From Phyllobates terribilis (taxonomy: Eukaryota), in assembly GCF_046119375.1 (NCBI RefSeq), contig NW_027362768.1:146816001-146880000 (forward strand): a stretch of DNA of 64,000 nt, read 5' to 3'. The stretch's first letter is position 1. Every line of letters starts with the position of its first letter. Made by a program: the position numbers and the translations under genes. Under the pieces are notes generated by a model, which did not search any database, had not been told where the DNA came from, and saw nothing but the letters and a program-made list of their open reading frames with translations. Below are positions 9,241 through 59,808 of the stretch, in pieces.

Positions 9241-9299
9241 TGACCCGTTATGCTGAGGAAAACCTGTTGGATCGTGATCCAGTGTACTTGGAAGAGCGA

Positions 9300-10720
9300 C
9301 CCTTTGGGCGCCAGTTAGGTGTGGGCCCGTCCCTGTCCCGCTGTGCTGGAGTACGGTCCTATTGAGAGGAGGGGTTCGGTTGAGCGAACTGACGAAAGGA
9401 CCGGAACTGAAGGGGGCGTCTCCTAGGAAGGGGGCGTCTCCTAGGAAGGGGGCGTCTCCTAGGAAGGGGGCATCTCCTAGGAAGCGGGCATCTCCTAGGA
9501 AGGGGGCGTTTGGATCTGGGCTAGGGGAGAGAGGTGCTCTTACCCCCCGTAGCATCAGAGATGATCTGGTCTAGCTTGGATGCAAACAGCCTGGAGCCTT
9601 GAAAAGGAAGATTAGTTAAGATCTTTTGGAAGCCGGGTCAGCACTCCAAGCCTTAAGCCAAAGAATTCTACGCAAGGCAACGAGATTGCTGGAAACCCAG
9701 GCTGAGCATGCAGCGGATATCCCTGCATGGACGATTTGATCTGCTAAGTCGGCCAGATCGTCCGGGGAGACTCCTGCTAGGATGCCCTGTTTGAGCTGTT
9801 TGGCCCATGTGGACACCGCTTTTGATACCCAAGTTGAGACAAAGGAAGGGCAAAGGGCGGTGCCCGCAGCCTCAAAGGCCAACTTAGTGAGGGCCTCAAC
9901 CTGTCTATCCGTGGTATCCTTAAGGGAGGAACCGTCCGGAAGAGACAGTACAGTCTTGGCCGAAAGGCGAGAGACGGGAGGATCTAAAGATGGGGACTCA
10001 GTCCATTTGCTGACAAGGTCACGGTTAAAGGGGTATAGGATGTTTAACTGTTTCTTTCCTGTAAAGCGCTTTTCAGGATGCTCCCACTGCTTCTGAAAGA
10101 CACAGTCAAATTCTGCATGGTTAGAAAAAGTGCATGCAGGGCGCTTAATTTTTTTGAACGGAACTGAGTAGTCCTGAGAAGGGGTCTCGTCTTCTCTAAC
10201 ATGCAGAGTCTGATTGACAGCCGTAATAAGGTTGTCAATCGTGTCCTGGATCCTTGAATACTGGTCTGAGTCGGAACCAGAGTCTGAATCCGATGCAGTG
10301 CTAGATCCCTGGGCGACCTCCGGGGAAGAGGTGTGAGACGCAGGGAGCATCTTGGAGTCTGGAGAGCTGGAGGATGAGCTTGTGCGAGTCCGTTTCTGAG
10401 AACGTGCCGTCAGTCTGCCCCTGTGAGGAGGGGGCAGGGGTGCTTGCAAATCGTCTGTGGGGACATTCGGAGCACTGGTGGCCGTGGATAACATAGGCAA
10501 ACGTTCTGGCAAGCGTTCCAAGACCTGCACCAGAGATTGAGAAACCCTGGTGAGGTCAGAGACAGACTGGGACATAGCAAAGCCCACTCCGGAAGGGAGG
10601 GAGTTCCTTTGTCCTGGGCGGCGGGGGGATCCTGGGGTGCTAGCATGGCGGGAGGTTTGCAGGTCGAGCAGAAGGCTGTAGTGAGACCCGCGGGCCACTT
10701 AGTACCGCAAAGAGTACAGG
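9300..10720 (-). pseudogene. DIRS ORF1 (gag-like), frameshifted
   Basis: ORF 9616-10698 with WTESPSLDPPVSRLS, homologous to ORF 29113-30420; N-terminal CxxC-x12-CxxC in a neighbouring frame. Confidence 0.8.
9409..9508. repeat. 18-bp tandem repeat GAAGGGGGCGTCTCCTAG x5.5
   Basis: Directly visible, inside DIRS A. Confidence 0.95.
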
Positions 10721-12461
10721 CATAGTTGAGAGCTCCCTGGGTTTGGGCATATGTGCAAGGCCAGGGATAATACAGAGGAAGGACACCTGTGGTCAGGAAA
10801 GGGTGTGGGTTGTGACAGGACAGTTCCTACCCGATCCTGCAGAGAAGCGGTCCCGTGTCCCCCTGAAAGGCTCCAAAGGTGAGGCTGGAGCGGGTCACAG
10901 TCAGGTGCCGACGGAGTAGGGAGCTGCGTGCGCAGAGTGATGGTGTCAGTGTAGGGGAAGGAGCAGAGGACGCTGCCCTGATGACGGGGCATGTCGAGGC
11001 TCCGATAGGCGGATGGAATGGGGGGGGGGGGGTGCGGGCTTGAAAGGCCCCCCCGTTGATAGGTCCGTGGAAGGCTCGAGGGCGTGACGGAAGCGTCACT
11101 ATGCTCCTCGGCCCTGGTTGGTGAAATAGCAGGGGGCGTAAAGCCGTCGGAGGGGGACCGCCCACCGGACACGCCCCCCAGACAGAGAAAAAAGCGTGGC
11201 AAAACTGAAGCGCATAATGGGAGAAGAAGGAGGAAGTGGCCCAGGGAAGCACTGTCAAGCACCATGTTTGGTGAGAGGAGGAGGGGGGGGGGGGGGATCC
11301 TGGCTTTTCCTCCTTCCCGGTCCTGGACAGTGCAGGAGATGGTGTCAACCCCAGAAGACTGGGGGGGGGGGGGGGGGGAAGAGGTCACCGGCAGGGACCA
11401 CCGTCTCCCTCCCAGGCCGCTCCGAGGAGGGGGCTGGGGAACAGGCTAGGACTGGCCACCAAAATCACCCTGAGACACCCTAAGGTGACAGGGGATAAGT
11501 CCTGCCCAGCGGGTCCGAGAGTGGGCGATGTGGGGGTAGCCACACTGCTCTCTCTGTCGCTTGTGGGTTAACAGGGGACGCAGTGTTCCCTGTTAGCCTG
11601 AAGAGCTGTATCTGAAAGAGAAAAAACAAAGGTTAATAAACACAACAAGGTTGGATCTGTGAAGATCCAGGTCTACCCCCTACAGACACTAAGCTTAAAC
11701 TGGTGATCTTGGTGCCTGTAGGCGGGTGTATACTGCGGAGGAGGAGCTATTTTCCTTTTTTTGCATAGTGTCAACCTCCTAGCGACAGCAGCATACACCC
11801 ATGGTCCTGTGTCCCCCAATGAAGCGATAGAGAAAGCACTGCAAGGTCAGTCACTGGGGTGACTAAGGGATTTACTTTAATCATGCTTATATTTCCCACC
11901 CTTGGCACATCACATTGTTTCTTGTGTCCCCCAATGAAGAGCTCGAAAGAGAGGATTTTTGGACTTGCCATGAAAACCCTGCCTCGTACCGGGGGGGGGG
12001 AAGGTTTACAGGGGGACAGCACCCACTTTTTTTTCCTAGTTGCCTCGTTGGGTGTATGAGCGCAATTTTTTTTTTTCCTTCTACTGCTTTAACTGAAAAA
12101 GCTTGGTTGCCAGTAGGCGGGTATAGGCTGCTGAGGAGGAGCAGACTTTTCTTAAGGTTCTAATACTGAGTGTCAGCCTCCAGGTGGCAGCAGCCTACAG
12201 CCATGGCATGGTTTCCTGTGTCCACCAATGGAGGCTACGAGAAAAAGCTTTTACAGTACGTAAAAAAAATAAATTCTAAACTCAGTAAAGTGAGAATAAG
12301 TACATTAAGTACCACAAGGCTATGAATATACACTGTGCTGCCCCTAATAGCCCAATGTCAGCATGTGCTATATAAAGCTGGTTGAGAATCAAGGGTCCAG
12401 AGGATGTATGCACTGAAGGACCATTTATTTTTCTCATGCCATAGCAGTGATCTCGGAAGCC

Positions 12462-21615: not shown

Positions 21616-40496
<18,881 letters not shown>

Positions 40497-40671: not shown

Positions 40672-42295
40672 CAGTACAGACCAAAAGTTTGGACACACCT
40701 CATTTAAAGATTTTTCTGTATTTTCTTGACTATGAAAATTGTACATTCACACTGAAGGCATCAAAACTATGAATTACCACATGTGGAATTATATACTTAA
40801 CAAAAAAGTGTGAAACAACTCAAAATATGTCTTCTATTCTAGGTTCTTCAAAGTAGCCACCTTTTGCTTTAATGACTGCTTTGCACACTCTTGGCATTCT
40901 CTTGATGAGCTTCAAGAGGTAGTCACCGGAAATGGTCTTCCAACAATCTTGAAGGAGTTCCCAGAGATGCTTAGCACCTGTTGGCCCTTTTGCCTTCACT
41001 CTGCGGTCCAGCTCACCCCAAACCATCTCGATTGGGTTCAGGTCTGGTGACTGTGGAGGCCAGGTCATCTGGCGTAGCACCCCATCACTCTCCTTCTTGG
41101 TCAAATAGCCCTTACACAGCCTGGAGGTGTGTTTGGGGTCATTGTCCTGTTGAAAAATAAATGATGGTCCAACTAAACGCAAACCGGATGGAATAGCATG
41201 CCGCTGCAAGATGCTGTGGTAGCCATGCTGGTTCAGTATGCCTTCAATTTTGAATAAATCCCCAACAGTGTCACCAGTAAAGCACCCCCACACCATCACA
41301 CCTCCTCCTCCATGCTTCACGGTGGGAACCAGGCATGTAGAGTCCATCCGTTCACCTTTTCTGTGTCGCACAAAGACATGGTGGTTGGAACCAAAGATCT
41401 CAAATTTGGACTCATCAGACCAAAGCACAAATTTCCACTGGTCTAATGTCCATTCCTTGTGTTCTTTAGCCCAAACAAGTCTCTTCTGCTTGTTGCCTGT
41501 CCTTAGCAGTGGTTTCCTAGCAGCTATTTTACCATGAAGGCCTGCTGCACAAAGCCTCCTCTTAACAGTTGTTGTAGAGATGTGCCTGCTGCTAGAACTC
41601 TGTGTGGCATTGACCTGGTCTCTAATCTGAGCTGCTGTTAACCTGCAATTTCTGAGGCTGGTGACTCGGATAAACTTATCCTCAGAAGCAGAGGTGACTC
41701 TTGGTCTTCCTTTCCTGGGGTGGTCCTCATGTGAGCCAGTTTCTTTGTAGTGCTTGATGGTTTTTGCAATTGCACTTGGGGACACTTTCAAAGTTTGCCC
41801 AATTTTTCGGACTCACTGACCTTCATTTCTTAAAGTAATGATGGCCACTCGTTTTTCTTTACTTGGCTGCTTTTTTCTTGCCATAATACAAATTCTAACA
41901 GTCTATTCAGTAGGACTATCAGCTGTGGATCCACCTGACTTCTGCACAACACAACTGATGGTCCCAACCCCATTTATAAGACAAGAAATCCCACTTATTA
42001 AACCTGACAGGGTACACCTGTGAAGTGAAAACCATTTCCGGTGACTACCTCTTGAAGCTCATCAAGAGAATGCCAAGAGTGTGCAAAGCAGTCATCAAAG
42101 CAAAAGGTGGCTACTTTGAAGAACCTAGAATATAAGACATATTTTCAGTTGTTTCACACTTTTTTGTTAAGTATATAATTCCACATGTGTTAATTCATAG
42201 TTTTGATGCCTTCAATGTGAATGTACAATTTTCATAGTCATGAAAATACAGAAAAATCTCTAAATGAGGTGTGTCCAAACTTTTGGTCTGTACTG
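40672..42295 (-). mobile_element. Full-length Tc1 transposon, ~265-bp TIRs, TA target duplication
   Basis: TA at 40670-40671 and 42296-42297; TIR CAGTACAGACCAAAAGTTTGGACACACC at both ends. Confidence 0.96.
40820..41884 (-). pseudogene. Tc1 DD34E transposase, 354 codons with a single TGA at codon 24
   Basis: MARKKQPSKEKRVAIITLRNEGQ*VRKIG..., GRPR, WSDES, QQDNDPKH, PDLNPIEMVW. Confidence 0.92.
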
Positions 42296-43046: not shown

Positions 43047-46000
43047 GCTCTGCTGCATCCACTATCTGTAGGCACGCACGCACGCACGCACTCGGCTCTG
43101 CTGCATCCACTATCTGTAGGCACGCACGCACGCGGCTCTGCTGCATCCACTATCTGTAGGCACGCACGCACGCGGCTCTGCTGCATCCACTATCTGTAGG
43201 CACGCACGCACGCGGCTCTGCTGCATCCACTATCTGTAGGCACGCACGCACGCGGCTCTGCTGCATCCACTATCTGTAGGCACGCACGCACGCGGCTCTG
43301 CTGCATCCACTATCTGTAGGCACGCACGCACGCACGCGGCTCTGCTGCATCCACTATCTGTAGGCACGCACGCACGCGGCTCTGCTGCATCCACTATCTG
43401 TAGGCACGCACGCACGCGGCTCTGCTGCATCCACTATCTGTAGGCACGCACGCACGCACGCGGCTCTGCTGCATCCACTATCTGTAGGCACGCACGCACG
43501 CACGCGGCTCTGCTGCATCCACTATCTGTAGGCACGCACGCACGCACGCGGCTCTGCTGCATCCACTATCTGTAGGCACGCACGCACGCGGCTCTGCTGC
43601 ATCCACTATCTGTAGGCACGCACGCACGCGGCTCTGCTGCATCCACTATCTGTAGGCACGCACGCACTCGGCTCTGCTGCATCCACTATCTGTAGGCACG
43701 CACGCACGCGGCTCTGCTGCATCCACTATCTGTAGGCACGCACGCACTCGGCTCTGCTGCATCCACTATCTGTAGGCACGCACGCACTCGGCTCTGCTGC
43801 ATCCACTATCTGTAGGCACGCACGCACTCGGCTCTGCTGCATCCACTATCTGTAGGCACGCACGCACTCGGCTCTGCTGCATCCACTATCTGTAGGCACG
43901 CACGCACGCGGCTCTGCTGCATCCACTATCTGTAGGCACGCACGCACGCGGCTCTGCTGCATCCACTATCTGTAGGCACGCACGCACGCACGCGGCTCTG
44001 CTGCATCCACTATGTGTAGGCACGCACGCACGCGGCTCTGCTGCATCCACTATCTGTAGGCACGCACGCACTCGGCTCTGCTGCATCCACTATCTGTAGG
44101 CACGCACGCACTCGGCTCTGCTGCATCCACTATCTGTAGGCACGCACGCACTCGGCTCTGCTGCATCCACTATCTGTAGGCACGCACGCACGCGGCTCTG
44201 CTGCATCCACTATCTGTAGGCACGCACGCACTCGGCTCTGCTGCATCCACTATCTGTAGGCACGCACGCACTCGGCTCTGCTGCATCCACTATCTGTAGG
44301 CACGCACGCACTCGGCTCTGCTGCATCCACTATCTGTAGACACGCACGCACTCGGCTCTGCTGCATCCACTATCTGTAGGCACGCACGCACGCACTCGGC
44401 TCTGCTGCATCCACTATCTGTAGGCACGCACGCACGCGGCTCTGCTGCATCCACTATCTGTAGGCACGCACGCACGCGGCTCTGCTGCATCCACTATCTG
44501 TAGGCACGCACGCACGCGGCTCTGCTGCATCCACTATCTGTAGGCACGCACGCACGCGGCTCTGCTGCATCCACTATCTGTAGGCACGCACGCACTCGGC
44601 GCTGCTGCATCCACTATCTGTAGGCACGCACGCACTCGGCGCTGCTGCATCCACTATCTGTAGGCACGCACGCACGCACGCGGCTCTGCTGCATCCACTA
44701 TCTGTAGGCACGCACGCACTCGGCTCTGCTGCATCCACTATCTGTAGGCACGCACGCACTCGGCGCTGCTGCATCCACTATCTGTAGGCACGCACGCACT
44801 CGGCGCTGCTGCATCCACTATCTGTAGGCACGCACGCACTCGGCGCTGCTGCATCCACTATCTGTAGGCACGCACGCACTCGGCTCTGCTGCATCCACTA
44901 TCTGTAGGCACGCACGCACTCGGCGCTGCTGCATCCACTATCTGTAGGCACGCACGCACTCGGCGCTGCTGCATCCACTATCTGTAGGCACGCACGCACG
45001 CACTCGGCGCTGCTGCATCCACTATCTGTAGGCACGCACGCACTCGGCTCTGCTGCATCCACTATCTGTAGGCACGCACGCACTCGGCTCTGCTGCATCC
45101 ACTATCTGTAGGCACGCACTCGGCTGTGCTGCATCCACTATCTGTAGGCACGCACTCGGCTGTGCTGCATCCACTATCTGTAGGCACGCACGCACGCACT
45201 TGGCTCTGCTGCATCCACTATCTGTAGGCACGCACGCACGCACTCGGCTCTGCTGCATCCACTATCTGTAGGCACGCTCTGGGCTCTGCTGCATCCACTA
45301 TCTGTAGGCACGCTCTGGGCTCTGCTGCATCCACTATCTGTAGGCACGCTCTGGGCTCTGCTGCATCCACTATCTGTAGGCACGCACTCGGCGCTACTGC
45401 ATCCACTATCTGTAGGCACGCACACACTCGGCGCTACTGCATCCACTATCTGTAGGCACGCACGCACTCGGCTCTGCTGCATCCACTATCTGTAGGCACG
45501 CACGCACACACTCGGCTCTGCTGCATCCACTATCTGTAGGCACGCTCTGGGCTCTGCTGCATCCACTATCTGTAGGCACGCACACACTCGGCTCTGCTGC
45601 ATCCACTATCTGTAGGCACGCACGCTCTGGGCTCTGCTGCATCCACTATCTGTAGGCACGCACGCACTCGGCTCTGCTGCATCCACTATCTGTAGGCACG
45701 CACGCACTCGGCTCTGCTGCATCCACTATCTGTAGGCACGCACGCTCTGGGCTCTGCTGCATCCACTATCTGTAGGCACGCACGCACTCGGCTCTGCTGC
45801 ATCCACTATCTGTAGGCACGCTCTGGGCTCTGCTGCATCCACTATCTGTAGGCACGCACGCTCTGGGCTCTGCTGCATCCACTATCTGTAGGCACGCACG
45901 CACTCGGCGCTGCTGCATCCACTATCTGTAGGCACGCACGCACTCTGCTCTGCTGCATCCACTATCTGTAGGCCCGCACGCACTCGGCTCTGCTGCATCC

Positions 46001-49000
46001 ACTATCTGTAGGGCTGCACGCACTCTGCTCTGCTGCATCCACTATCTGTAGGCACGCACGCACTCGGCTCTGCTGCATCCACTATCTGTAGGCACGCACG
46101 CACTCGGCTCTGCTGCATCCACTATCTGTAGGCACGCACGCACGCGGCTCTGCTGCATCCACTATCTGTAGGCACGCACGCACGCGGCTCTGCTGCATCC
46201 ACTATCTGTAGGCACGCACGCACGCGGCTCTGCTGCATCCACTATCTGTAGGCACGCACGCACGCGGCTCTGCTGCATCCACTATCTGTAGGCACGCACG
46301 CACGCGGCTCTGCTGCATCCACTATCTGTAGGCACGCACGCACGCGGCTCTGCTGCATCCACTATCTGTAGGCACGCACGCGGCTCTGCTGCATCCACTA
46401 TCTGTAGGCACGCACGCACGCACGCGGCTCTGCTGCATCCACTATCTGTAGGCACGCACGCACGCACGCACGCGGCTCTGCTGCATCCACTATCTGTAGG
46501 CACGCACGCACGCGGCTCTGCTGCATCCACTATCTGTAGGCACGCACGCACGCGGCTCTGCTGCATCCACTATCTGTAGGCACGCACGCACTCGGCTCTG
46601 CTGCATCCACTATCTGTAGGCACGCACGCACGCGGCTCTGCTGCATCCACTATCTGTAGGCACGCACGCACTCGGCTCTGCTGCATCCACTATCTGTAGG
46701 CACGCACGCACTCGGCTCTGCTGCATCCACTATCTGTAGGCACGCACGCACTCGGCTCTGCTGCATCCACTATCTGTAGGCACGCACGCACTCGGCTCTG
46801 CTGCATCCACTATCTGTAGGCACGCACGCACGCGGCTCTGCTGCATCCACTATCTGTAGGCACGCACGCACGCGGCTCTGCTGCATCCACTATCTGTAGG
46901 CACGCACGCACGCACGCGGCTCTGCTGCATCCACTATCTGTAGGCACGCACGCACGCGGCTCTGCTGCATCCACTATCTGTAGGCACGCACGCACTCGGC
47001 TCTGCTGCATCCACTATCTGTAGGCACGCACGCACTCGGCTCTGCTGCATCCACTATCTGTAGGCACGCACGCACTCGGCTCTGCTGCATCCACTATCTG
47101 TAGGCACGCACGCACTCGGCTCTGCTGCATCCACTATCTGTAGGCACGCACGCACGCGGCTCTGCTGCATCCACTATCTGTAGGCACGCACGCACTCGGC
47201 TCTGCTGCATCCACTATCTGTAGGCACGCACGCACTCGGCTCTGCTGCATCCACTATCTGTAGACACGCACGCACTCGGCTCTGCTGCATCCACTATCTG
47301 TAGGCACGCACGCACTCGGCTCTGCTGCATCCACTATCTGTAGGCACGCACGCACGCACTCGGCTCTGCTGCATCCACTATCTGTAGGCACGCACGCACG
47401 CACGCGGCTCTGCTGCATCCACTATCTGTAGGCACGCACGCACGCGGCTCTGCTGCATCCACTATCTGTAGGCACGCACGCACGCGGCTCTGCTGCATCC
47501 ACTATCTGTAGGCACGCACGCACTCGGCGCTGCTGCATCCACTATCTGTAGGCACGCACGCACTCGGCGCTGCTGCATCCACTATCTGTAGGCACGCACG
47601 CACGCACGCGGCTCTGCTGCATCCACTATCTGTAGGCACGCACGCACTCGGCTCTGCTGCATCCACTATCTGTAGGCACGCACGCACTCGGCGCTGCTGC
47701 ATCCACTATCTGTAGGCACGCACGCACTCGGCGCTGCTGCATCCACTATCTGTAGGCACGCACGCACTCGGCGCTGCTGCATCCACTATCTGTAGGCACG
47801 CACGCACTCGGCTCTGCTGCATCCACTATCTGTAGGCACGCACGCACTCGGCGCTGCTGCATCCACTATCTGTAGGCACGCACGCACTCGGCGCTGCTGC
47901 ATCCACTATCTGTAGGCACGCACGCACGCACTCGGCGCTGCTGCATCCACTATCTGTAGGCACGCACGCACTCGGCTCTGCTGCATCCACTATCTGTAGG
48001 CACGCACGCACTCGGCTCTGCTGCATCCACTATCTGTAGGCACGCACTCGGCTCTGCTGCATCCACTATCTGTAGGCACGCACTCGGCTGTGCTGCATCC
48101 ACTATCTGTAGGCACGCACGCACGCACTTGGCTCTGCTGCATCCACTATCTGTAGGCACGCACGCACGCACTCGGCTCTGCTGCATCCACTATCTGTAGG
48201 CACGCTCTGGGCTCTGCTGCATCCACTATCTGTAGGCACGCTCTGGGCTCTGCTGCATCCACTATCTGTAGGCACGCTCTGGGCTCTGCTGCATCCACTA
48301 TCTGTAGGCACGCACTCGGCGCTACTGCATCCACTATCTGTAGGCACGCACACACTCGGCGCTACTGCATCCACTATCTGTAGGCACGCACGCACTCGGC
48401 TCTGCTGCATCCACTATCTGTAGGCACGCACGCACACACTCGGCTCTGCTGCATCCACTATCTGTAGGCACGCTCTGGGCTCTGCTGCATCCACTATCTG
48501 TAGGCACGCACACACTCGGCTCTGCTGCATCCACTATCTGTAGGCACGCACGCTCTGGGCTCTGCTGCATCCACTATCTGTAGGCACGCACGCACTCGGC
48601 TCTGCTGCATCCACTATCTGTAGGCACGCACGCACTCGGCTCTGCTGCATCCACTATCTGTAGGCACGCACGCTCTGGGCTCTGCTGCATCCACTATCTG
48701 TAGGCACGCACGCACTCGGCTCTGCTGCATCCACTATCTGTAGGCACGCTCTGGGCTCTGCTGCATCCACTATCTGTAGGCACGCACGCTCTGGGCTCTG
48801 CTGCATCCACTATCTGTAGGCACGCACGCACTCGGCGCTGCTGCATCCACTATCTGTAGGCACGCACGCACTCTGCTCTGCTGCATCCACTATCTGTAGG
48901 CCCGCACGCACTCGGCTCTGCTGCATCCACTATCTGTAGGGCTGCACGCACTCTGCTCTGCTGCATCCACTATCTGTAGGCACGCACGCACTCTGCTCTG

Positions 49001-50400
49001 CTGCATCCACTATCTGTAGGCACGCACGCACTCGGCTCTGCTGCATCCACTATCTGTAGGCACGCACGCACTCGGCTCTGCTGCATCCACTATCTGTAGG
49101 CACGCACGCACGCACTCGGCTCTGCTGCATCCACTATCTGTAGGCACGCACGCACGCGGCTCTGCTGCATCCACTATCTGTAGGCACGCACGCACGCACT
49201 CGGCTCTGCTGCATCCACTATCTGTAGGCACGCACGCACTCGGCTCTGCTGCATCCACTATCTGTAGGCACGCACGCACGCACTCGGCTCTGCTGCATCC
49301 ACTATCTGTAGGCACGCACGCACTCGGCTCTGCTGCATCCACTATCTGTAGGCACGCACGCACTCGGCTCTGCTGCATCCACTATCTGTAGGCACGCACG
49401 CACTCGGCTCTGCTGCATCCACTATCTGTAGGCACGCACGCACGCGGCTCTGCTGCATCCACTATCTGTAGGCACGCACGCACTCGGCTCTGCTGCATCC
49501 ACTATCTGTAGGCACGCACGCACTCGGCTCTGCTGCATCCACTATCTGTAGGCACGCACGCACACACTCGGCTCTGCTGCATCCACTATCTGTAGGCACG
49601 CTCTGGGCTCTGCTGCATCCACTATCTGTAGGCACGCACACACTCGGCTCTGCTGCATCCACTATCTGTAGGCACGCACGCTCTGGGCTCTGCTGCATCC
49701 ACTATCTGTAGGCACGCACGCACTCGGCTCTGCTGCATCCACTATCTGTAGGCACGCACGCTCTGGGCTCTGCTGCATCCACTATCTGTAGGCACGCACA
49801 CACTCGGCTCTGCTGCATCCACTATCTGTAGGCACGCACGCACTCGGCTCTGCTGCATCCACTATCTGTAGGCACGCACGCACTCGGCTCTGCTGCATCC
49901 ACTATCTGTAGGCACGCACGCACTCGGCGCTGCTGCATCCACTATCTGTAGGCACGCACGCACTCGGCTCTGCTGCATCCACTATCTGTAGGCACGCACG
50001 CACTCGGCGCTGCTGCATCCACTATCTGTAGGCACGCACACACTCGGCTCTGCTGCATCCACTATCTGTAGGCACGCACGCACTCGGCTCTGCTGCATCC
50101 ACTATCTGTAGGCACGCACGCACACACTCGGCTCTGCTGCATCCACTATCTGTAGGCACGCTCTGGGCTCTGCTGCATCCACTATCTGTAGGCACGCACA
50201 CACTCGGCTCTGCTGCATCCACTATCTGTAGGCACGCACGCTCTGGGCTCTGCTGCATCCACTATCTGTAGGCACGCACGCACTCGGCTCTGCTGCATCC
50301 ACTATCTGTAGGCACGCACGCACTCGGCGCTGCTGCATCCACTATCTGTAGGCACGCACACACTCGGCTCTGCTGCATCCACTATCTGTAGGCACGCTCT
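43047..50400. repeat. ~7.3 kb satellite of ~40-bp unit GGCTCTGCTGCATCCACTATCTGTAGGCAC(GCAC)n, roughly 180 copies
   Basis: Directly visible; length variants come from GCAC copy number. Confidence 0.98.
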
Positions 50401-51255: not shown

Positions 51256-52587
51256 GACTTTAATGGGGCAATGTGTTAAAGGGACAGTCTCCTAAATGCA
51301 ATCCCAGCCTATAAGGTCTATTGGGACCAAAAACCTTATAGATACGACACGGTGCCCCCCTCGGTGTATTATAGGGGTGGCCATTCCTGAGTACATGTCA
51401 CCTCTCCTGACACATTCAGTTTAGTCAGTAATTTTACTCCCCATAATATAACAATTCTGAAAATTCGTTGTATGATATAGGTCCTCTGTTGTCCCTCCTG
51501 GAAATGTATGACTAAAGCAATAACTGTGTGTTACTAATCGTGGAGGGGGTGGTCCCGTACACTTAGACCATCCAGGCATTGTTGACCGTGTCACGTTCGA
51601 GGAACACACCTTGCCCTAGTTGTCAATTTAGTCTACATTTCTAGGAGTAATAACAGAGGAACGACACGAGAAATAAGAAGAGGTGCCACCGTATTATTGT
51701 GATTTTATTTTTCTTAGGGGGAAAACAAATATTTAATCATACAGAATAAGAGGGATTTTTACTGCTGTTTGTTTACAGCTTGTTGTCTAGGTTACCAGCC
51801 ACTTCATCAGTCTGTCAGTAGTGGCCGGTCTCCTTGGCAAGGATCCTCAGTGCCCTTGCACTTCTGTGGTGCTTGAGAGGTAAAGCTGCTTCTGTTTGCA
51901 GCATCAAAAAGCACTATAGCGGATCACTAGCGCAATAATGCTGCTGGTCTGATCTGTCAATCAAGCAGGAGAGCAGTCCCCCAACAAGTTGGGCACTGCT
52001 GAAAACAAATTATGAAACAACCTCTTTAATGGTTAATTTGCAAGAGCCTTCACTGCACAGAACACTTCTTCTCCAGAGTCCAGTGGTGGCGGCTTTACAC
52101 CACTCCATCCGACACCCAGCATTGTGCTTGGTTATGTAAGGCTGCATGCAGCTGCTTGGTCATGAAGCTCCAGTGTTTGTGCTGATGAGGAGGTCTGTCC
52201 TTTGCAGTTATGGAGTCAGCAGAGCGGTGGTGACTTTTCTGCCCTCTGCTCCTCAGCACTCGGCCCCCCGGGTCTCCACTTCATGGCTGAGTTGCTGCGG
52301 TTCCTTCACTTCTCAATAATATCACTCACAGGTGATGGAGGAAGAAATGTCATGCCCAGACTTGTTACCCCGGTGGCTGCTAGTACAGGACCGTGCTTGT
52401 ATCAGCGAGCTCTGCACCACTGGCTGCTCTGTCACATGGTAGTAAAGGCAGACGGCACGGCGGGGGCCGGATGTTATACACTGGGGGGGGGGGAGATAAA
52501 AAACCTGAATTGATTGATTGACATGTCCCAATACTTTTCTCTGTAGTCTACGTTCAAGCTTGGTGCCGCCAATTTCATTGTTTTTGC

Positions 52588-52920
52588 ATATTAAATTTCC
52601 CAGAGCAGCATTGCACGGCGAATAAGCTTCCTTACCTTGGCATGCCAGAGCTGGTATGTCACTCCCGAGAAGGAGAAACATTACCCCTTAGACCTCAGTC
52701 CAGAGCCTCTCACCTAGCCAAATCAGTTCTCATACTTTGCACTGATGAGGGCCAACAGCCCGAAACACCGTGTCTGCAAATTGAGATTCTGATTTGGCTT
52801 TTATCCTAAGTCATATCGCACGACTCGTTAAAGGGTCGATTGTGACTTGTAGGATCCCTGCTTCCAATAGGTGGCGCTACAGAGTACAAGTCCTCTTTCT
52901 CTCTGAAGAGGCAATTTGCA
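52588..52920 (+). mobile_element. Retrozyme-like 333-bp non-coding insert with 12-bp flanking direct repeat
   Basis: CATTGTTTTTGC at 52576-52587 and 52921-52932; contains the hammerhead. Confidence 0.75.
52716..52799 (+). ncRNA. Type I hammerhead ribozyme
   Basis: Stem I TTTGCA/TGCAAA, CTGATGA core, stem II GGGC-CAACA-GCCC, GAAA, short stem III ACA(CCG)TGT, GTC cleavage triplet (C at 52774), extended stem I AGCCAAATCAG/CTGATTTGGCT. Confidence 0.9.
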
Positions 52921-54115
52921 CATTGTTTTTGCTGTGAGTTTTGGAGACTGCAGAAAACAAAATAAACACAATGTGAACGCAGCCTAATATAATCTATGAT
53001 AAACCTGTTGGAAACCCTGGTGAGGAGTCGTCTGGTGAGTCAGAGCAGAAATCACCCATGTTTGTAATGAGATTACATGTTGGAGGCTTCCTGGTGCAGG
53101 TCACAATCGTGTTGTGCAAATCCACAGCGTCCAGACCCATCTTTGACCTCATTTCAGTGACTGTCTGATAATCCTGCCTGGCTGTCTGTTTATAGGAACC
53201 CGGAGACTCTATAATCCTGTCCTCTGTCCGGGGTCTTTTCTTATATCGGATCAGTGGTGCTCCAGCTCCTGCCGCCCCCATTGATCCACTATTTGAAGGG
53301 GCCATAGCTCTCTGCATCCCCTTGTTTGCCAGGCAGGACGCCTCACGTTCTGCATTGTTATTCCTGCTATTACAACTCATTGCTGCTTAGTCGCAGTCAT
53401 GTGAATAGGACTGAGCTGTAATACCAGGTGCAGCCACTACTAAATGTATGGTGCTGTGTCTAACAATGAAGGGGCCATGGTATTTGCCCCTGCTGTGGGC
53501 TGATCAGTGGGAGTGTTGGTAGTTGGGCCCCACCAATCAGGTATTGATGATAGGATACATAATATATATTCAAGTCCCAGAGTACCATTTTAATTGTGTG
53601 TGCATTTAGGATCAGGAACGCATGTAATACGTTTTCTTCTAGTATCTTCATCGTGTCTTGTGCCTAAATGAACCTCCATATGTTACATAATTGATTTTTA
53701 ATAGAATAGTGTAATGCCTAATTTGCCCTGTGGGGGTGCTATAGGGAAATCAAACACTTGCTACAGGTTACAGCTGATTGCTGAGATCTCAGCTGCAGAT
53801 TCAACAAAAATGGATTGTACAAAGCGGATAACTGTCCAGGTCTCATTTTGTATCTCTGATGAGAGAACTTGTGTAATCATTCCTGATGTGAACATTGGCC
53901 AACGATGAGTAACGTTCGGAGGATTCTGATAGAAGTGGAGCGTCAGTGATGATTAATCTGACGTTACGTGTACTGAAGCTCTCGTGTCGCCTTCCTTCCA
54001 GCTTTCTATTACTGATGTGCTCCTTGCTGCTTCCTTGACTATTTCTCTTTTTAGGGATTCGCGATCACCAGTAATCCATACACTGGGACCAGCAGTAGCG
54101 CTTCCATGAGCCGAA

Positions 54116-54184: not shown

Positions 54185-57100
54185 GTAAGGAAATGCCAAG
54201 GTGGGTATGGAAATGGCGCTCCACTAGTGTTACGGGTGGGGGCGGGGGGGATCCTTGGAGTGCCGTACTTATTGTATATAAGCTGAAGAACCCGCAAGGT
54301 TCACGGGGCTCTGATCTGGCAGTCACGGACTACCGATGTGGCTGCTGAACCCGTGTCCGGTGACAACTCTACAAAACCTTGTACATCACAATACAACACA
54401 TGGATTTCCACATGTGACCGGTAATTTTTTTTTTAAAGGGGATGTATTGGATAAGCAAATAGTGCCACCCTTAGGCTGTGCCTGGTATTGCAATCCATGA
54501 ACAAAACTGAACTTTAATTACTGCTTAGCCCCTGAACAGAAGTGACTCTGTTTTTGGGACAATGTGGACAACCCTGGTGCGATCAGTCTACTTATGATTC
54601 TTTGTCTGGTTTGTAGCTCGGGCTCTTTATAGACTTCAACCCCGAGGACATGATGATGGGTATCCCAGATGACCCGGACGACGGAGATCTTGAGGCAGAA
54701 TTGGCTGCACTTACTGGTGGCAAGGTTGCACCTAAGGCCAAGCCTAAAGGAAAAGGTGAGCAAGCCGGCCGGCCGGCCATACACATCAGGTAGATGTCCG
54801 CCGAATGCTTGTTAGGCTGACTGCAATCTCTCAGGACTTCCTGTGTACATAGGATGACCGAGCATTCATATATTTTCAGTAGGGTGAGAGAATTTAAGCG
54901 TTATTCCCTATCCATCTGGAATAACTAATACAGGGACCCTCCAGCGATCTGGTGTGTGCATACTCAACTTTCACTCCATTCATTGTCTATGGGACTGCTG
55001 GAGAGAGTACATTGCTCTTCTATTATCGGCAGTCCCATAGACAATAAGTAGTGAAAAGTGTTGAGCATGCGCACCTCCAAGATGGGTGTGCAGAACTCTA
55101 GTTTCCGGGATCCAGAGCCCCTTTCTTGGTATTTGTCGGACCCCCAACGATCAGCAAGTTATCCCCTGGTATTCTGTATGGGTGTCCTGAAGAAGGAGTC
55201 AGTGTGACTCTGAAGCGCATAGACAATAAACCTGCATTCTATATCCGATCGGGAATGTCTTCTTTCCAGTAAACGCAGACTACTTCCATAGCCCTGACTA
55301 TTTTTTTCCAGAGCCCCGTTCTTTGGATTTCTAGGGGTCTCAGCAGTTGGACCCCCAACTATCAGCAAGTTATCCCCGATCCAATGGAGAAGGGATAAAA
55401 CTTTTTATTTTGGCAGCTAAAGGGCCTGGCTCTTCTACTGTACCACTGCATGTCTCCCATACAGAAGCATGGCTAACCATGCAAGTTACTAACTTCGGAG
55501 TGAAAAAGGGTCTCAAAATGGAAATAATCCAATATGTCTGAATTATGAGAAAGCTTTAGCCTCCATTCCCGTTTTTTTTTTTTTCCTCATCTGTCACACA
55601 ACTTCTGCAGAGCTTTCTCCTCTCATCGTATCATTGACATCTTGTAGATACATTTGACATAAAGGACTGATTTAACAAATTAACACCTACAACCAAAGGA
55701 AAATGCCAAATAAATATGATGAAAAAAATAAATAAAAAATCATCAGGTCGTCAACACAAATGAAAAAGCCCTACAAAAAACCCAATGATAATAAATAAAA
55801 TCAGAATGTAATTAAATAAATGTATTAATTTACAAGTTTTCTGTACATAAAATACCAAAATGCACAAGACAGGACATGATAAAATCCAAAGGAGGGGGAG
55901 GAACACAGGATAAGTAGCAGATGGGACAAAGGTCTTCTAGTTAATCCAATGGTAGTAACATAAATAGAAAAGACAAGGACCATTCTAAAGTACATATTAG
56001 TGAGACTACCAAAGGTTATAGATAATCACACGATTAGATAAAATGACCCTGACTTTCCAAAAAAATCAATCTGATAATATATTATAAATTTTTAATGTGT
56101 CAAGGAGGTCCAAAAATAACCAGAAGAGTATGCCGTAGGATGTAATATAATCAATCAGTGGAACATAAATCTCAAGGCGCTCCGCATAGTACGGCGAACT
56201 AACAGGTATAAGTCACTCATGATAGTAACAGAGCTGAAACATCCATAAAGTAAATGTAGCTGTGTAACTTCCAGCTTGTGTTTCGCTACGCTTCTTCAGG
56301 GAGTGCTTACTTATATTCTGATAGTTTATTTTATTGTCATTGGGGTTTTTTTTGTATTGGGCTTTTTCATAGTGCTACATTATAGTAAATGCCGCTGTGT
56401 AACCTCCAGCGTGCGTTTCGCTGCGCTTCTTCAGGGGGGGTTAATTTTATTTTACTTGATTTTTTATTCTTATTGTTTATTTTATTATCATAGGGTTTTT
56501 TTGTTTTACGACAGAAGCTCTTGGACAAATCACGCAACCAAAAGTACTTGTGCGAAATGTCTGCAGTTTGCTGTCACGTGACTATTTTAGAGCTAAGAGC
56601 AAAATTCCAGACACGTTGCACAGTTGCTTGCAAACTATATCGACCGTGTGTCGGATATTACATGACAGTCTCCTCTTAGTCACAGTAGGTGGCAGCGTGG
56701 CCCCATTTGACAATAATTAGAGGCGATTTCACAATGTGACCACAGCCTAAACTTTGCTGCTAGTAACCCATGACCCCCTTACTATGTCTCCACAGCTCCT
56801 CTCCCTATGGATCATATCGAGAAGATGGCACAAGAATGCATGAAAGACTTGGATGCAGAAGACGGAGATGATGACAATGACCTGGAGGAAGATGATGACT
56901 TGCTGGTAAATATTAACATTGCAGTATCACTACAGTGATATTTTGCAAAAGAAGTAGCAGAATTCTCTGAAATTTGGTTTTAATGAATGAAAATTTTTAG
57001 AAATTTACAACTTATGTTTTTTCTTTTTACTTTTTATCTATCTATCGTGCAGCAAAATATAAATACGAACGTCTCCACCCTTTCTAACCTTGCCAAAACT

Positions 57101-57283
57101 TTGACATATGAAAATGTTGTTTTTTTGTGGTTTTCTTAATAGGCTGAGCTCCAGGAAGTGGTAGGAGAGGATGAGGAGGAGACATCAACCTCTTCAGATG
57201 TTGTAGAAGTAGCCGCACCTCAGCAGGTGGAAGATGCAGACCCTGCACCTCTCCTTATCTCCAACCTGAAAAGCCCATCACAG
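54116..57283 (+). CDS. CC2D1B: Coiled-coil and C2 domain-containing protein 1B, first 4 coding exons (gene continues beyond what I can trace)
   Basis: MLGRRPGKKNAQAKGRGAAAAKE / LGLFIDFNPEDMMMG...DLEAELAALTG / APLPMDHIEKMAQECMKDLD...DDDLL / AELQEVVGED; synteny with ORC1 as in human. Confidence 0.9.
54617..54755 (+). CDS. CC2D1B: CC2D1B coding exon 2
   Basis: LGLFIDFNPEDMMMGIPDDPDDGDLEAELAALTGGKVAPKAKPKGK. Confidence 0.93.
56796..56905 (+). CDS. CC2D1B: CC2D1B coding exon 3
   Basis: APLPMDHIEKMAQECMKDLDAEDGDDDNDLEEDDDLL. Confidence 0.93.
57143..57283 (+). CDS. CC2D1B: CC2D1B coding exon 4 (3' end 57226 or 57283)
   Basis: AELQEVVGEDEEETSTSS...; two in-frame GT donors. Confidence 0.78.
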
Positions 57284-58855
57284 GTAACTGCCCCAGAACT
57301 GAGCAGCGCCCCCTACTGTTCTCACCTTTGTATGTAAGTGTCACTGGAGGGTTCGATTTATCAGATGACAATTTTGGAGTCTGAGATTCTGTTTGTTCCT
57401 TCTTTAGCTGTTCCGTCCAAGGTGGAGTCTTTTCCAGCATTAAAGAATTGCAAAGACCTGCAGAGAGTATTGCATTATTTACAATGCAAGTGTGGTAGGA
57501 ACCCTGGGGTGACATCCGGCCTTGAGAGCCATGCAAACATGTACATTGGCCCCCCTGATAAGGAAGAATCCCAAGCGATTCTTGCTGGGAAAGATTGACT
57601 TAAATTGCATTTTTTTTTATCTTTTTTTTTTTCTATCTAAAAGATTTGATATGTCACTTTGGGGAGAAATTGGCGATCGCGGTCCTCACTGCCACTTAAA
57701 TGCAGTTGCCACCCATTTAAATTTCAGAGGAAATATGGATTAGAAGGATTGGAGGGTGGGGAGACCGGACGAGTTAGCTGGTGACATATCAGGGCAGATT
57801 TATCAATACTCCTTTACTTTTAGACATTGCAAACTTAGATTAGAAAGTCTTGAAATGCGTCAGTTATCGTAGTAGTTCATGCATCTTGCGCATCGTTAGA
57901 CTATCTACTCTGAGTTTACACTGCCTTTTATATGGCTTTTTTGTGCCAGAAATATGCGCCAAAATTTTGGTGCATAGTGTTGTGTGTTAAGCCACGTCCC
58001 TTTCCTTACTGCCTCACCCACCCCAGGGGGCACGGAGTGTCTAATGCTCATAAGACCAAATTGCAAATGCCAAGAGAAAAGTTTTGAACAAAGTTTCTAA
58101 AAATTGATCTGACATCATTGCACTGTTATTCAGTGGGAAACCTGCCCACGCAGTGTGGCGATCAGCCCTTACTGGTCTATTAATGCAGTTCACCGAGATT
58201 TGGCGGTATTATTTTTTTCCGTTTTGTTTAGTTCTAATTTGTACAAGCACATGGAATATGTATAAGGATCAGCCTCACTTTCTAACGGATATTTGCTGGA
58301 AGAACCCCTCCCTGCGGCTGACACAGAGGCCACACTGTTCCCTCTCCTGGCCCGGTGTCCCTGTGTTTTTATTTCCACCAGTAACTATTTCCACTCACTC
58401 CTGCAGTGGGATCTGCAGGATTCTGTATGTATCGGGCATCCTCACTGTGACTATAAGCTCGACTCTAAGCATAAAGGTTTCACTGGTCTGATCCTAAACC
58501 CAAGACGGAGATGACATTTAGGATCTTGTCGCCAGGGTCACTTATTTTCCAGCATGCTTCAGTATAGGACTAATCTCAAGCTTACTCACTGAGCCAGTTA
58601 GAACTGGAGAAGATGCCGATGTGATGGTGAGTACGAGAGATCCCCTTACTATATGATGGCGAGTACTAAAGGAAGAGGGGAGTAAGCCACTGACGGACAC
58701 CTCTGGGGGCAGCTTATCTCCTAATGAATCAGAAGGATGGGGCATGATAATGCAATATGCCCGCTCTTTCCCTTCCCGGACATAATATCTTGCAGGGGGA
58801 AAATTCCATATTGTTGGCCAGTATTGCTGAAATCAGTGGATTTGGTCAACATTAA

Positions 58856-59808
58856 AGGGGTTGTCCGGGCACAACATATTGATGACATATTCGGCAGATT
58901 ATCAATATGAGATCGTCGAGGGCACCCCCTCCAATAAGCTGTTATTTGCTCCAGTAGATGGAAACACTTTGTAAGATGATGTAAAGTACAGGACTATTCA
59001 TTGTATAGCTGCTGCTGCTGCTGCTGGGTACGGCAGAACAGCCCCTATAGTAAGTGCAGCTGTATTCAGTGATTAGCTGCTGCTGGGTACAGCAGAACAG
59101 CCCCTATAATAAGGTACAGCTCTTTTCGGTGTGTAGCTGCCGCTGCTGGGTACTGCAGAACAGCCCCTGTAGTAAGTGCAGCTGTATTCATTGTATAGCT
59201 GCCGCTGCTGGGTTCTGTAGAACAGCCCCTATAATAAGTGCAGCTCTATTCTGTGTGTAGCAGCTGCTGGGTTCTGTAGAATAGCCCCTATAATAAGTGC
59301 AGCCCTATTCTGTGTGTAGCAACTGCTGGGTTCTGTAGAACAGCCCCTATAATAAGTGCAGCTCTATTCTGTGTGTAGCAGCTGCTGGGTTCTGTAGAAC
59401 AGCCCCTATAATAAGTGCAGCCCTATTCTGTGTGTAGCAGCAACTGCTGGGTTCTGTAGAACAGCCCCTATAATAAGTGCAGCTCTATTCTGTGTGTAGC
59501 AGCTGCTGGGTTCTGTAGAACAGCCCCTATAATAAGTGCAGCCCTATTCTGTGTGTAGCAGCTGCTGCTGGGTACTGCAGAACAGCCCTATAAAAGGAAT
59601 AGGAGCTTTTTTTGCAGTACCCTGCAGCGATCACTACACACTGAACAGAGTTGCACTTAGCAGCTCCTTACAAAATGTTTCCATCCAGCGGCCACTGAAG
59701 GAAATAACAGCTGATCAGTGACGTGACTGACGTCGGACCCCCACTGATCTCACAGTTATGACCTATTTTATGAATAGGACATCAATATATTGAACCCGGA
59801 CAACCCCT
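58856..59808. mobile_element. T2/Kolobok-type MITE containing a minisatellite
   Basis: TTAA at 58852-58855 and 59809-59812; perfect 14-bp TIR AGGGGTTGTCCGGG / CCCGGACAACCCCT. Confidence 0.85.
58996..59593. repeat. ~58-bp minisatellite, ~10 copies
   Basis: GTGCAGCTCTATTCTGTGTGTAGCAGCTGCTGGGTTCTGTAGAACAGCCCCTATAATAA units. Confidence 0.92.

What the first reader, a model, noticed from the sequence alone, without database searches (positions are those of the whole stretch)
52716..52799. Complete type I hammerhead ribozyme in non-coding DNA upstream of the CC2D1B coding exons
Seen: TTTGCA(52736-41) CTGATGA(52742-48) GGGC-CAACA-GCCC(52749-61) GAAA(52762-65) CACCGTGT C(52774) TGCAAA(52775-80). Every conserved hammerhead core position is intact with a GUC cleavage triplet. 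Stem I extends through an internal loop (TAC/T) into TCTCA/TGAGA and an 11-bp AGCCAAATCAG/CTGATTTGGCT helix. Established: a stem I internal loop ~6 bp from the core contacting loop 2 is the tertiary architecture of natural type I hammerheads, and a very short near-palindromic stem III (here ACACCGTGT) is typical of newt satellite 2 and Penelope-associated hammerheads that cleave as dimers. Inference: a catalytic RNA from an amphibian retrozyme family. The class is known, but this family may be undescribed.
Basis: partly seen in the sequence, partly recalled or inferred. Interest (0 to 1): 0.92.

Follow-up and report, generated by a model that had tools for sequence, protein, structure and literature searches.

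The report
Hammerhead ribozyme in frog retrozyme copy
The stretch is a genuine-looking self-cleaving hammerhead RNA motif, sitting in one dispersed 333-bp copy of a very abundant 332-bp repeat of the amphibian "retrozyme / satellite-2" kind, so it is a good example of a known class rather than something new.

Summary
52736-52780 carries every conserved hammerhead core position, a 6-bp helix I, a 4-bp helix II, a GUC cleavage site (cut expected after C52774) and the long internally looped extension of helix I (52716-52799).

It is not a chance motif. The ribozyme lies in a 333-bp insert (52588-52920) flanked by a perfect 12-bp target-site duplication. Public DNA and RNA runs from about ten coded organisms hold this unit at very high depth with sharp edges and head-to-tail junctions 332 nt apart. 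Among family copies, helix II changes in a compensatory way (G-C to A-U, C-G to G-C). Among the best-supported variants listed, the only variable core position is N7, the one position hammerheads tolerate.

Helix III is too weak to form alone but pairs as a dimer, as in newt and axolotl ribozymes.

This fits the published non-LTR retrozyme class, reported in salamanders and all sampled amphibians including Xenopus. This copy is a solo monomer. It is not shown to be transcribed or cleaved, and Rfam's curated threshold is not reached.

This scan had already noted the same 332-bp hammerhead unit many times elsewhere in this genome. Verdict: real, a new member of a known kind, modest interest.

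The parts
52576..52587 (.). Left copy of the 12-bp target-site duplication CATTGTTTTTGC. Its last 5 nt (TTTGC) also match the end of the repeat unit, which is microhomology.
   Evidence: this is the only 12-mer shared by the two flanks, and it occurs exactly twice in the window. Family depth rises from zero here.
52588..52920 (+). Solo, unit-length (333 bp) copy of a 332-nt non-coding repeat (non-LTR retrozyme / satellite-2-like unit). GC is 47%.
   Evidence: There are sharp depth edges at about 52583-52592 and 52920-52927 in six runs. Head-to-tail joints 52914->52583 and 52924->52593 give a period of 332. As RNA the unit folds at -103.4 kcal/mol, z -3.97. As a circle it folds at -96.5 kcal/mol, z -3.3.
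52716..52799 (+). Extended type I hammerhead ribozyme, including the full helix I extension.
   Evidence: The Rfam HH9 alignment covers 52724-52796.
52733..52735 (+). Loop 1, 5' side (UAC), opposite U52781. This is the internal loop of helix I, six base pairs from the core.
   Evidence: It aligns to the UAC of the Rfam HH9 consensus. The same 3-nt/1-nt loop is seen in unrelated natural hammerheads.
52736..52741 (+). Helix I, 5' strand (UUUGCA). It pairs with 52775-52780 (UGCAAA).
52742..52748 (+). Core C3-A9 (CUGAUGA).
   Evidence: In family copies only U7 (52746) varies, to C or G, among the best-supported variants listed.
52749..52761 (+). Helix II (GGGC/GCCC) with loop 2 (CAACA).
   Evidence: Compensatory variants occur in family copies: 52751 G>A with 52759 C>T, and 52752 C>G with 52758 G>C. 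Their frequencies match run by run.
52762..52764 (+). Core G12 A13 A14.
52765..52773 (+). Helix III region ACACCGUGU (A15.1...U16.1). It is near-palindromic, unstable as a hairpin, and pairs with a second copy.
   Evidence: hairpin 0 kcal/mol, self-duplex -7.4 kcal/mol. Family variants with a 1-nt deletion give the perfect palindrome ACACGUGU at -10.3 kcal/mol.
52774..52775 (+). Predicted cleavage site: after C17 (52774) and before U1.1 (52775).
   Evidence: The position follows from the hammerhead consensus. It is not confirmed by read ends (table 6: none).
52914..52921 (+). Octamer-like motif at the unit junction. It reads ATTTGCAC in this copy and ATTTGCAT in the family.
   Evidence: One search places ATTTGCA at 52914. 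In one search, 52921 C>T appears in about all reads that cross the junction (70/70, 110/111, 40409/41452). A promoter role is inference only.
52921..52932 (.). Right copy of the 12-bp target-site duplication CATTGTTTTTGC.

Best explanation
The stretch is an intact-looking canonical ('extended') type I hammerhead ribozyme. It is carried by one dispersed, unit-length copy (52588-52920) of a very abundant 332-nt non-coding repeat of the non-LTR retrozyme / newt-satellite-2 kind. The inferred mechanism follows the published model. Tandem arrays of the unit are transcribed into multimers. Two neighbouring ribozymes pair through their palindromic helix III, or a single one uses the looped helix I extension, and cut after C17. 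This releases 332-nt RNAs that can be circularised and reverse-transcribed, probably by Penelope-like element enzymes, into new genomic copies. The copy in this window is the product of such an event. It is one unit long and bounded by a 12-bp target-site duplication. Its ends lie 146 nt downstream of the cleavage site and show microhomology to the target, which suggests the template was longer than one cleaved monomer (a circle or a multimer). As a lone copy it lacks a partner ribozyme and is most likely an inert by-product. Shown here: the motif, the unit, the duplication, the abundance, head-to-tail forms, compensatory change in helix II, and presence in RNA libraries. Inferred: cleavage, circularisation, the reverse transcriptase and the template form.
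For: The motif and helices are exact. The Rfam HH9 match has E 5.9e-5 locally, with the UAC loop 1 and CAA-A loop 2 aligned. The 12-bp flanking repeat is unique in the window. In a DNA-like run, summed depth in the unit is 2e5-1.4e6 against 10.9 in the flanks. The edges are sharp, and joints with period 332 occur in DNA and RNA runs of several organisms. Helix II covaries, G-C/A-U and C-G/G-C, with matched frequencies from about 1% to 90% across six runs. The only core variant among the best-supported variants listed is at N7. The helix III hairpin is unstable, while the self-duplex is -7.4 kcal/mol. The same ACACGUGU helix III is seen in the axolotl Ax353 retrozyme construct (supplement of PMC7229834). 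The unit has 47% GC and is significantly self-paired. Published class features match: 170-400 nt units, GC under 50%, target-site duplications longer than 4 bp, dimeric ribozymes in amphibians, and dispersed monomers plus arrays in frogs. Earlier notes of this scan record 332-bp tandem hammerhead units elsewhere in this genome.
Against: The Rfam gathering score is not reached, 27.4 against 52 bits. That threshold also misses clear hammerheads in other loci. In poly(A) RNA-seq no excess of read ends falls at 52774/52775, no read is 99% or more identical to this copy, and 80-84% of family reads run on into unrelated sequence, so they come from copies embedded in other transcripts. Junction reads cannot tell circles from tandem transcripts. 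An intact-looking motif does not guarantee activity: eight of nine Xenopus retrozyme dimers showed no cleavage in vitro. The variant tables show only the best-supported rows, so low-frequency core variants cannot be excluded. The covariation amounts to two evolutionary events, not many.
Confidence: 0.82

Rival explanations
1. It is a solo pseudo-LTR or fragment of an autonomous Penelope-like element (PLE), not a non-autonomous retrozyme unit.
For: PLE terminal repeats carry type I hammerheads, and frog retrozymes are phylogenetically close to them.
Against: PLE hammerheads are described as minimal variants lacking helix III and the loop-loop contacts. This one is canonical, with a 6-bp helix I, loop 1 and loop 2. 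The family forms head-to-tail repeats with a 332-nt period. None of the ten large ORFs scanned in the window matched a reverse transcriptase or GIY-YIG family.
Confidence: 0.06
2. It is a remnant of ordinary satellite DNA. A tandem array collapsed to one unit by recombination, with no retrotransposition involved.
For: The family exists as tandem arrays.
Against: A perfect 12-bp direct repeat of non-family sequence brackets exactly one unit. This is the footprint of an insertion. Array collapse would not create it.
Confidence: 0.05
3. It is a domesticated ribozyme that processes a host transcript of the gene downstream, like the amniote intronic HH9/HH10.
For: The best Rfam match is HH9. It has the same orientation as the CC2D1-like open frames that start about 1.8 kb downstream.
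Against: It is one of a very large number of copies and differs from the family majority at many positions. It has a target-site duplication, and no RNA reads match this copy. No conservation of this locus was shown.
Confidence: 0.04
4. It is a chance match to the hammerhead consensus, with no ribozyme function in the family.
For: A moderately strict descriptor hits about 0.005 times per shuffled window. The Rfam gathering score is not reached.
Against: There is a high-copy family with the motif retained across about ten organism labels. Helix II changes are compensatory and core variation is limited to N7 among the variants listed. The helix I extension has 22 base pairs in all.
Confidence: 0.01

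Closest known systems
Non-LTR retrozymes of amphibians: axolotl Rtz331/Rtz353 (Cervera and de la Pena 2020, PMC7229834) and frog families (Li, Clavereau and Pollet 2026, bioRxiv 10.64898/2026.07.22.740005)
   Same: A roughly 330-nt non-coding unit with one canonical type I hammerhead. Helix III is weak and palindromic, implying dimeric cleavage; the helix III sequence ACAC(C)GUGU nearly equals that of the axolotl Ax353 construct. The family has tandem arrays plus dispersed monomers, GC under 50%, a target-site duplication longer than 4 bp, and a strongly self-paired RNA.
   Different: Sequence homology outside the ribozyme was not tested, because no reference sequence could be handed to the tools. 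By eye only short motifs recur. Circular RNA is not demonstrated here. Whether this particular family is already catalogued (Repbase/Dfam, or the preprint's tables) could not be checked.
Newt satellite 2 'extended hammerhead' (Epstein and Gall 1987; Pabon-Pena et al. 1991; as summarised in PMC6155905)
   Same: About a 330-bp unit. Helix I is extended through an internal loop that works with a specific loop 2. Cleavage is dimeric through helix III. An octamer-like motif in the unit is reminiscent of the snRNA-type promoter reported for satellite 2 (cited in PMC2220036).
   Different: The host is said to be an anuran rather than a salamander, on the word of earlier notes that I did not verify. 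The promoter is not shown, and the primary sequences were not compared.
Rfam RF02275 Hammerhead_HH9 (amniote intronic hammerhead)
   Same: It is the best covariance-model match. The UAC loop 1, 6-bp helix I, 4-bp helix II with a CAA-rich loop 2 and the core all align. Reviews attribute the likeness to domestication of retroelement ribozymes (PMC6155905).
   Different: It scores 27.4 bits against a gathering score of 52. Helix III is shorter. It is a multi-copy repeat rather than a single conserved intronic locus.
Minimal hammerheads of Penelope-like elements (PMC4209133)
   Same: Type I topology, dimeric logic and association with retroelements.
   Different: Those have a long helix II, a short helix I, and no loop 1 / loop 2 contact or helix III. 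This one has the canonical architecture.

Membership tests
Hammerhead ribozyme, canonical metazoan type I | Conserved core: C3 U4 G5 A6 N7 G8 A9, G12 A13 A14, the A15.1-U16.1 pair, and H17 at the cleavage site. | tested here: met
   CUGAUGA at 52742-48, GAA at 52762-64, A52765/U52773, and C52774 (GUC triplet).
Hammerhead ribozyme, canonical metazoan type I | Three helices around the core, with helix I open-ended (type I): helix I about 6 bp, helix II about 4 bp, helix III short and palindromic. | tested here: met
   helix I 6 bp, helix II 4 bp, helix III 3 bp with a 3-nt loop. Helix III is not stable alone (0 kcal/mol), as described for this class.
Hammerhead ribozyme, canonical metazoan type I | Loop 1 / loop 2 elements needed for the tertiary contact. 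| tested here: met
   The UAC/U internal loop and CAACA loop 2 align to the Rfam HH9 consensus. They recur in unrelated natural hammerheads. The contact itself is not testable in silico.
Hammerhead ribozyme, canonical metazoan type I | Curated Rfam score threshold. | tested here: not met
   best match HH9 at 27.4 bits against a gathering score of 52. As a calibration, six metagenomic loci with clear long-helix-III hammerheads also gave no gathering-level hit. The threshold is therefore insensitive for such short motifs.
Hammerhead ribozyme, canonical metazoan type I | Helices supported by compensatory change among related copies. | tested here: met
   Helix II: 52751/52759 G-C to A-U and 52752/52758 C-G to G-C, with matched frequencies in six runs. 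This is two events, read from marginal frequencies and not from single reads. The cross-family alignment A2 is 100% paired, with 7 of 13 pairs compensatory. However, those loci were pre-selected for helices I and II.
Hammerhead ribozyme, canonical metazoan type I | Self-cleavage after position 17. | not testable with these tools
   No excess of read ends at 52774/5 in poly(A) RNA-seq, a library type that is poorly suited to show it.
Non-LTR retrozyme (Cervera and de la Pena 2020) | Non-coding unit of about 170-400 nt with one type I hammerhead, occurring head-to-tail, without LTR, PBS or PPT. | tested here: met
   The unit is 332 nt, and joints with period 332 occur in DNA-like and RNA runs. 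The window itself holds a single unit. LTR, PBS and PPT were not looked for.
Non-LTR retrozyme (Cervera and de la Pena 2020) | GC below 50%, and target-site duplications longer than 4 bp when present. | tested here: met
   GC is 47.3%. The duplication is 12 bp. The criteria are quoted.
Non-LTR retrozyme (Cervera and de la Pena 2020) | Expressed as linear and circular unit-length RNA. | tested here: inconclusive
   Family reads and head-to-tail junction reads are present in RNA-seq. Tandem DNA arrays exist too, so circles are not shown.
Non-LTR retrozyme (Cervera and de la Pena 2020) | Highly self-paired RNA. | tested here: met
   Linear z is -3.97. Circular z is -3.3, with 58% of bases paired.
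Non-LTR retrozyme (Cervera and de la Pena 2020) | Co-occurrence with autonomous Penelope-like elements in the genome. | not tested
   Only this window was available. The ten large ORFs scanned gave no reverse transcriptase.
Newt satellite 2 (as a sequence family) | Sequence homology over the roughly 330-bp unit. | not tested
Newt satellite 2 (as a sequence family) | Internal snRNA-type promoter. | tested here: inconclusive
   The family consensus has the octamer ATTTGCAT at the unit junction. No proximal element was identified and there are no transcription start data.

The most novel reading that the evidence does not exclude
The solo copy may be a direct genomic footprint of how these elements integrate. 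It is exactly one unit long. Its ends lie 146 nt downstream of the ribozyme cut, at the octamer-bearing junction. It has a 12-bp duplication whose two ends each share 3-5 nt with the element. This would fit target-primed reverse transcription once around a circular RNA, or along a multimer, guided by microhomology, rather than copying of the linear self-cleaved monomer. If most solo copies in the genome share this permutation point, it would give the first sequence-level rule for retrozyme integration in a vertebrate.
Probability: 0.25. Interest if true: 0.5.

Novelty: new member of a known kind. Interest (0 to 1): 0.3.

Why it matters
It adds a well-documented example to the amphibian retrozymes: unit, target-site duplication, helix II covariation, and three ribozyme subtypes within one family. 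It also shows that the family is shared, at near-identical 31-mers, by about ten organism labels. It does not change what is known about hammerheads. Its main practical use is as a clean solo insertion from which integration rules could be read, and as a candidate for cleavage assays. Most frog retrozyme dimers tested so far did not cleave.

Tried and rejected
- Rfam at gathering thresholds over the whole window gave nothing. Only E-value mode gave HH9.
- I looked for further copies in the window by pattern, repeats and tandem repeats, and found none.
- I scanned public metagenome and viral contigs for the core + helix II + loop 2 to obtain real family sequences. The 14 metagenomic loci all carry other hammerhead families, with a long helix III and no homology outside the ribozyme. 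The viral scan gave 0. No alignment of true family copies could therefore be built, and covariation rests on the read laying tables.
- The cross-family alignment is supportive but partly circular, because the loci were pre-filtered for helices I and II. Three short-helix-III rows were misaligned by MAFFT and were left out.
- Mapping the cleavage site from read ends gave no pile-up, and poly(A) libraries are unsuitable for this.
- MFE folding of a tandem dimer does not show the double hammerhead. Intermolecular helix III inside closed helix I is formally a pseudoknot, so this says nothing.
- I tried to read the primary newt papers (PMC308520, PMC361788, PMC333935). They are not held.
- I tried to name the downstream exons with the protein atlas, and the result was uninformative.
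- I considered an A/B-box pol III (SINE-like) promoter by eye. The order and matches are poor, so I dropped it.
- I considered reading a preferred family 3' end from loose ends at 52920. It cannot be separated from tandem continuations, so I dropped it.

Full report
**What is in the sequence**

On the + strand:
- 52742-52748 is CUGAUGA (C3-A9).
- 52749-52761 is a 4-bp helix II (GGGC/GCCC) closed by CAACA.
- 52762-52764 is G12 A13 A14.
- 52765-52773 is ACACCGUGU, from A15.1 to U16.1.
- C52774 is position 17 of a GUC site.
- UUUGCA (52736-41) pairs with UGCAAA (52775-80) as a 6-bp helix I.

Helix I continues through an internal loop (UAC, 52733-35, opposite U52781) into a 5-bp helix and then an 11-bp helix, spanning 52716-52799. 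The 84-nt stretch folds at -32.8 kcal/mol (z = -4.95). The hammerhead secondary structure is within 1.5 kcal/mol of that optimum.

**Is it more than chance?**

This is the only CUGAUGAG..CGAAAC site in the window, with 0.02 expected. My fuller descriptor hits once in the window and twice in 400 dinucleotide shuffles. That frequency is rare per window but not negligible for a scan of many windows, so the motif alone is not decisive.

Rfam gives no hit at gathering thresholds. In E-value mode the best family is Hammerhead_HH9, at 27.4 bits against a gathering score of 52 and E = 5.9e-5 for 301 nt. The core, the UAC loop 1 and the CAA-rich loop 2 are all aligned. As a calibration, six metagenomic loci with obvious hammerheads also gave no gathering-level hit. 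Failing that threshold therefore weighs little.

**The element around it**

A perfect 12-mer, CATTGTTTTTGC, occurs exactly twice in the window, at 52576-87 and 52921-32. It brackets 333 bp.

When contigs and reads of public runs are laid on the region, depth is zero or single-copy in the flanks. One DNA-like run gives 10.9 in the flanks and 2e5 to 1.4e6 inside 52583-52924, with sharp edges. The tool warns that this ratio is not a copy number. It still indicates a very abundant repeat.

Head-to-tail joints (52914->52583 and 52924->52593) give a period of 332 nt. They appear in DNA-like runs, in contigs of RNA libraries and in raw RNA-seq reads. About ten coded organism labels hold 20-63% of the unit's sampled 31-mers.

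The window has only this one unit. It is therefore a solo, unit-length insertion with a target-site duplication. The unit has 47% GC and is significantly self-paired, with z = -3.97 as a linear RNA and -3.3 as a circle.

Earlier first-stage notes of this scan describe the same stretch as a 333-bp monomer with a 12-bp duplication. They also record many tandem 332-bp hammerhead units elsewhere in this genome. My read-based period and my duplication agree with them.

**Evidence that the ribozyme is under constraint in the family**

Among the best-supported differences between family copies and this copy, those inside the minimal hammerhead fall into four groups:
- 52746, which is U7, the one core position that hammerheads leave free. 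It changes to C or G.
- 52756, in loop 2.
- Two pairs of changes in helix II.
- One-nucleotide deletions in helix III.

The first helix II pair is 52751 G>A with 52759 C>T, turning G-C into A-U. In read direction + the counts are 71 and 69 reads in one RNA run and 139 and 143 in another. In one DNA-like run the shares are 77% and 92%, and in another they are about 1%.

The second pair is 52752 C>G with 52758 G>C, turning C-G into G-C. The shares are 86% and 82% in one run, 46% and 52% in a second, and 23% and 16% in a third.

None of these changes is a CpG transition. The partners track each other from about 1% to about 90% across runs, as expected if they sit in the same copies.

Three caveats apply. 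I see marginal frequencies, not single reads. These are two evolutionary events, not many. Only the best-supported rows of the tables are shown, so minor core variants cannot be excluded.

The family thus has at least three helix II / loop 2 forms: GGGC-CAACA-GCCC, GGAC-CAAUA-GUCC and GGGG-CAACA-CCCC.

**Helix III and the mode of cleavage**

ACACCGUGU does not form a stable hairpin (0 kcal/mol). It pairs with a second copy at -7.4 kcal/mol. The family variant lacking one C is the perfect palindrome ACACGUGU, which pairs at -10.3 kcal/mol.

This is the published behaviour of amphibian type I hammerheads. A weak, palindromic helix III gives poor cleavage as a monomer and efficient cleavage as a dimer (PMC7229834; PMC4209133). 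The axolotl Ax353 construct in the supplement of PMC7229834 has the same ACACGUGU.

A review also records that newt ribozymes can cut as single 'extended' hammerheads. These need an internally looped extension of helix I compatible with loop 2 (PMC6155905), and that architecture is present here.

**Expression**

Two poly(A) RNA-seq runs kept as raw reads were laid on the region:
- Each gives about a thousand family reads from the 9-13 million records sampled.
- 80-84% of these reads run on into unrelated sequence, so they come from copies embedded in other transcripts.
- None is 99% or more identical to this copy.
- Both read directions occur.
- About 5% of reads show the head-to-tail junction.
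- There is no excess of ends at 52774/52775.

The family is therefore present in RNA. This copy is not shown to be transcribed, and neither cleavage nor circles are shown. The library type is poorly suited to show either.

**Comparison with what is known**

All tested features match the non-LTR retrozymes defined by Cervera and de la Pena. These features are type I hammerhead units of about 170-400 nt, no LTR, GC under 50%, target-site duplications longer than 4 bp when present, and self-paired RNAs. In amphibians the units are about 330-350 nt with dimeric ribozymes.

A 2026 preprint finds such elements in all seven amphibians sampled, with a mean consensus length of 316 bp. In Xenopus it reports dispersed monomers, arrays, and a relationship to Penelope-like element terminal repeats. 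It also reports that only one of nine Xenopus dimers cleaved in vitro. That is a warning against equating an intact motif with activity.

The ten large ORFs I scanned in this window matched no reverse transcriptase or GIY-YIG family.

The metagenome scan returned 14 loci with the same core, helix II and loop 2 but different families, all with a long helix III and no other homology. With the window's ribozyme they align to a structure that is 100% paired, with 7 of 13 pairs compensatory. Those loci were pre-filtered for helices I and II, so only helix III is an independent test there.

**A point worth following**

The insert's ends do not coincide with the ribozyme cut. They lie 146 nt downstream of it, at the place where the family consensus reads ATTTGCAT. 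The last five bases of the duplicated 12-mer (TTTGC) match the unit's end. Three bases near the 12-mer's start (ATT, after the initial C) match what follows that point in the unit.

A single-unit insert with microhomology at both junctions is what target-primed reverse transcription around a circular or multimeric template would give. Copying of the linear cleaved monomer would not produce it. This is inference from one copy. The loose-end tables could not separate true element ends from tandem continuations.

**Verdict**

It is a new member of a known kind, at most. I could not check whether this family is already catalogued, nor identify the species myself. The ribozyme class, its amphibian retrozyme context and its dimeric logic are all published, and this scan has met the same unit many times in this genome.

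Noticed in passing
window 45000-50397 (may start earlier): A 40-bp satellite with about 135 copies at 93% identity, with 36- and 44-bp variants. It ends 2.2 kb upstream of the retrozyme copy.
   Followed up: no
window 52400-52495: Another repeat family ends here. Summed depth is about 500 in a DNA-like run and about 350 in an RNA-library run, against about 10 in unique flanks.
   Followed up: no
window 54617-54790, 56774-56935, 57143-57334 (+): Open frames rich in acidic residues look, from my memory only, like the N-terminal exons of a CC2D1 protein. The protein atlas lookup of the first one was uninformative.
   Followed up: partly
window 40820-41791 (-) and 1723-2322 (-): Tc1/mariner-type transposase ORFs: HTH_Tnp_Tc3_2 at E 1.6e-11 and DDE_3 at E 2e-7.
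   Followed up: partly
window 29113-30420 (+): A 435-aa ORF whose C-terminal part matches Pfam LAP2alpha (E 1.7e-8, above the curated cut-off).
   Followed up: no
window 7725-11388 (-): A run of four long ORFs (392, 233, 360 and 229 aa) on the minus strand with no Pfam match at E 0.001 or better. It may be a degraded mobile element.
   Followed up: partly
window 59020-59593: A tandem repeat with a 59/121-bp period, about 9.5 or 4.8 copies, at 88-90% identity.
   Followed up: no
window 52775-52781, 52736-52741 and 52914-52920: The hexamer TTTGCA and its complement TGCAAA occur three times in the unit. Two of them form helix I of the ribozyme and one lies at the unit junction. The junction copy could in principle compete with helix I pairing.
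   Followed up: no
RNA run X37, family position 52778: 126 reads from one expressed locus begin their homology to the unit at 52778, three bases from the predicted cleavage site (loose ends). This may be a copy whose 5' end derives from a self-cleaved RNA, or it may be coincidence.
   Followed up: no
L001 439-463 and 1065-1089; L008 325-349 and 905-929: Lake metagenome contigs carry tandem canonical type I hammerheads 626 and 580 nt apart, with a UAC- or UAU-type loop 1. They are probably retrozymes of an unidentified eukaryote.
   Followed up: partly
L003, L004, L005, L007, L011 (e.g. L005 660-900): Metagenome contigs with a canonical hammerhead followed about 115 nt later by a second copy. 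That copy has lost part of helix I and has G12 replaced by A (CCCAAAAC), so it is a likely dead partner.
   Followed up: partly
L013 787-850 (-): A metagenome contig with a type I hammerhead whose helix III is ACACGUGU followed by A17. The helix III sequence is identical to that of the axolotl Ax353 construct and of the frog family variant.
   Followed up: no
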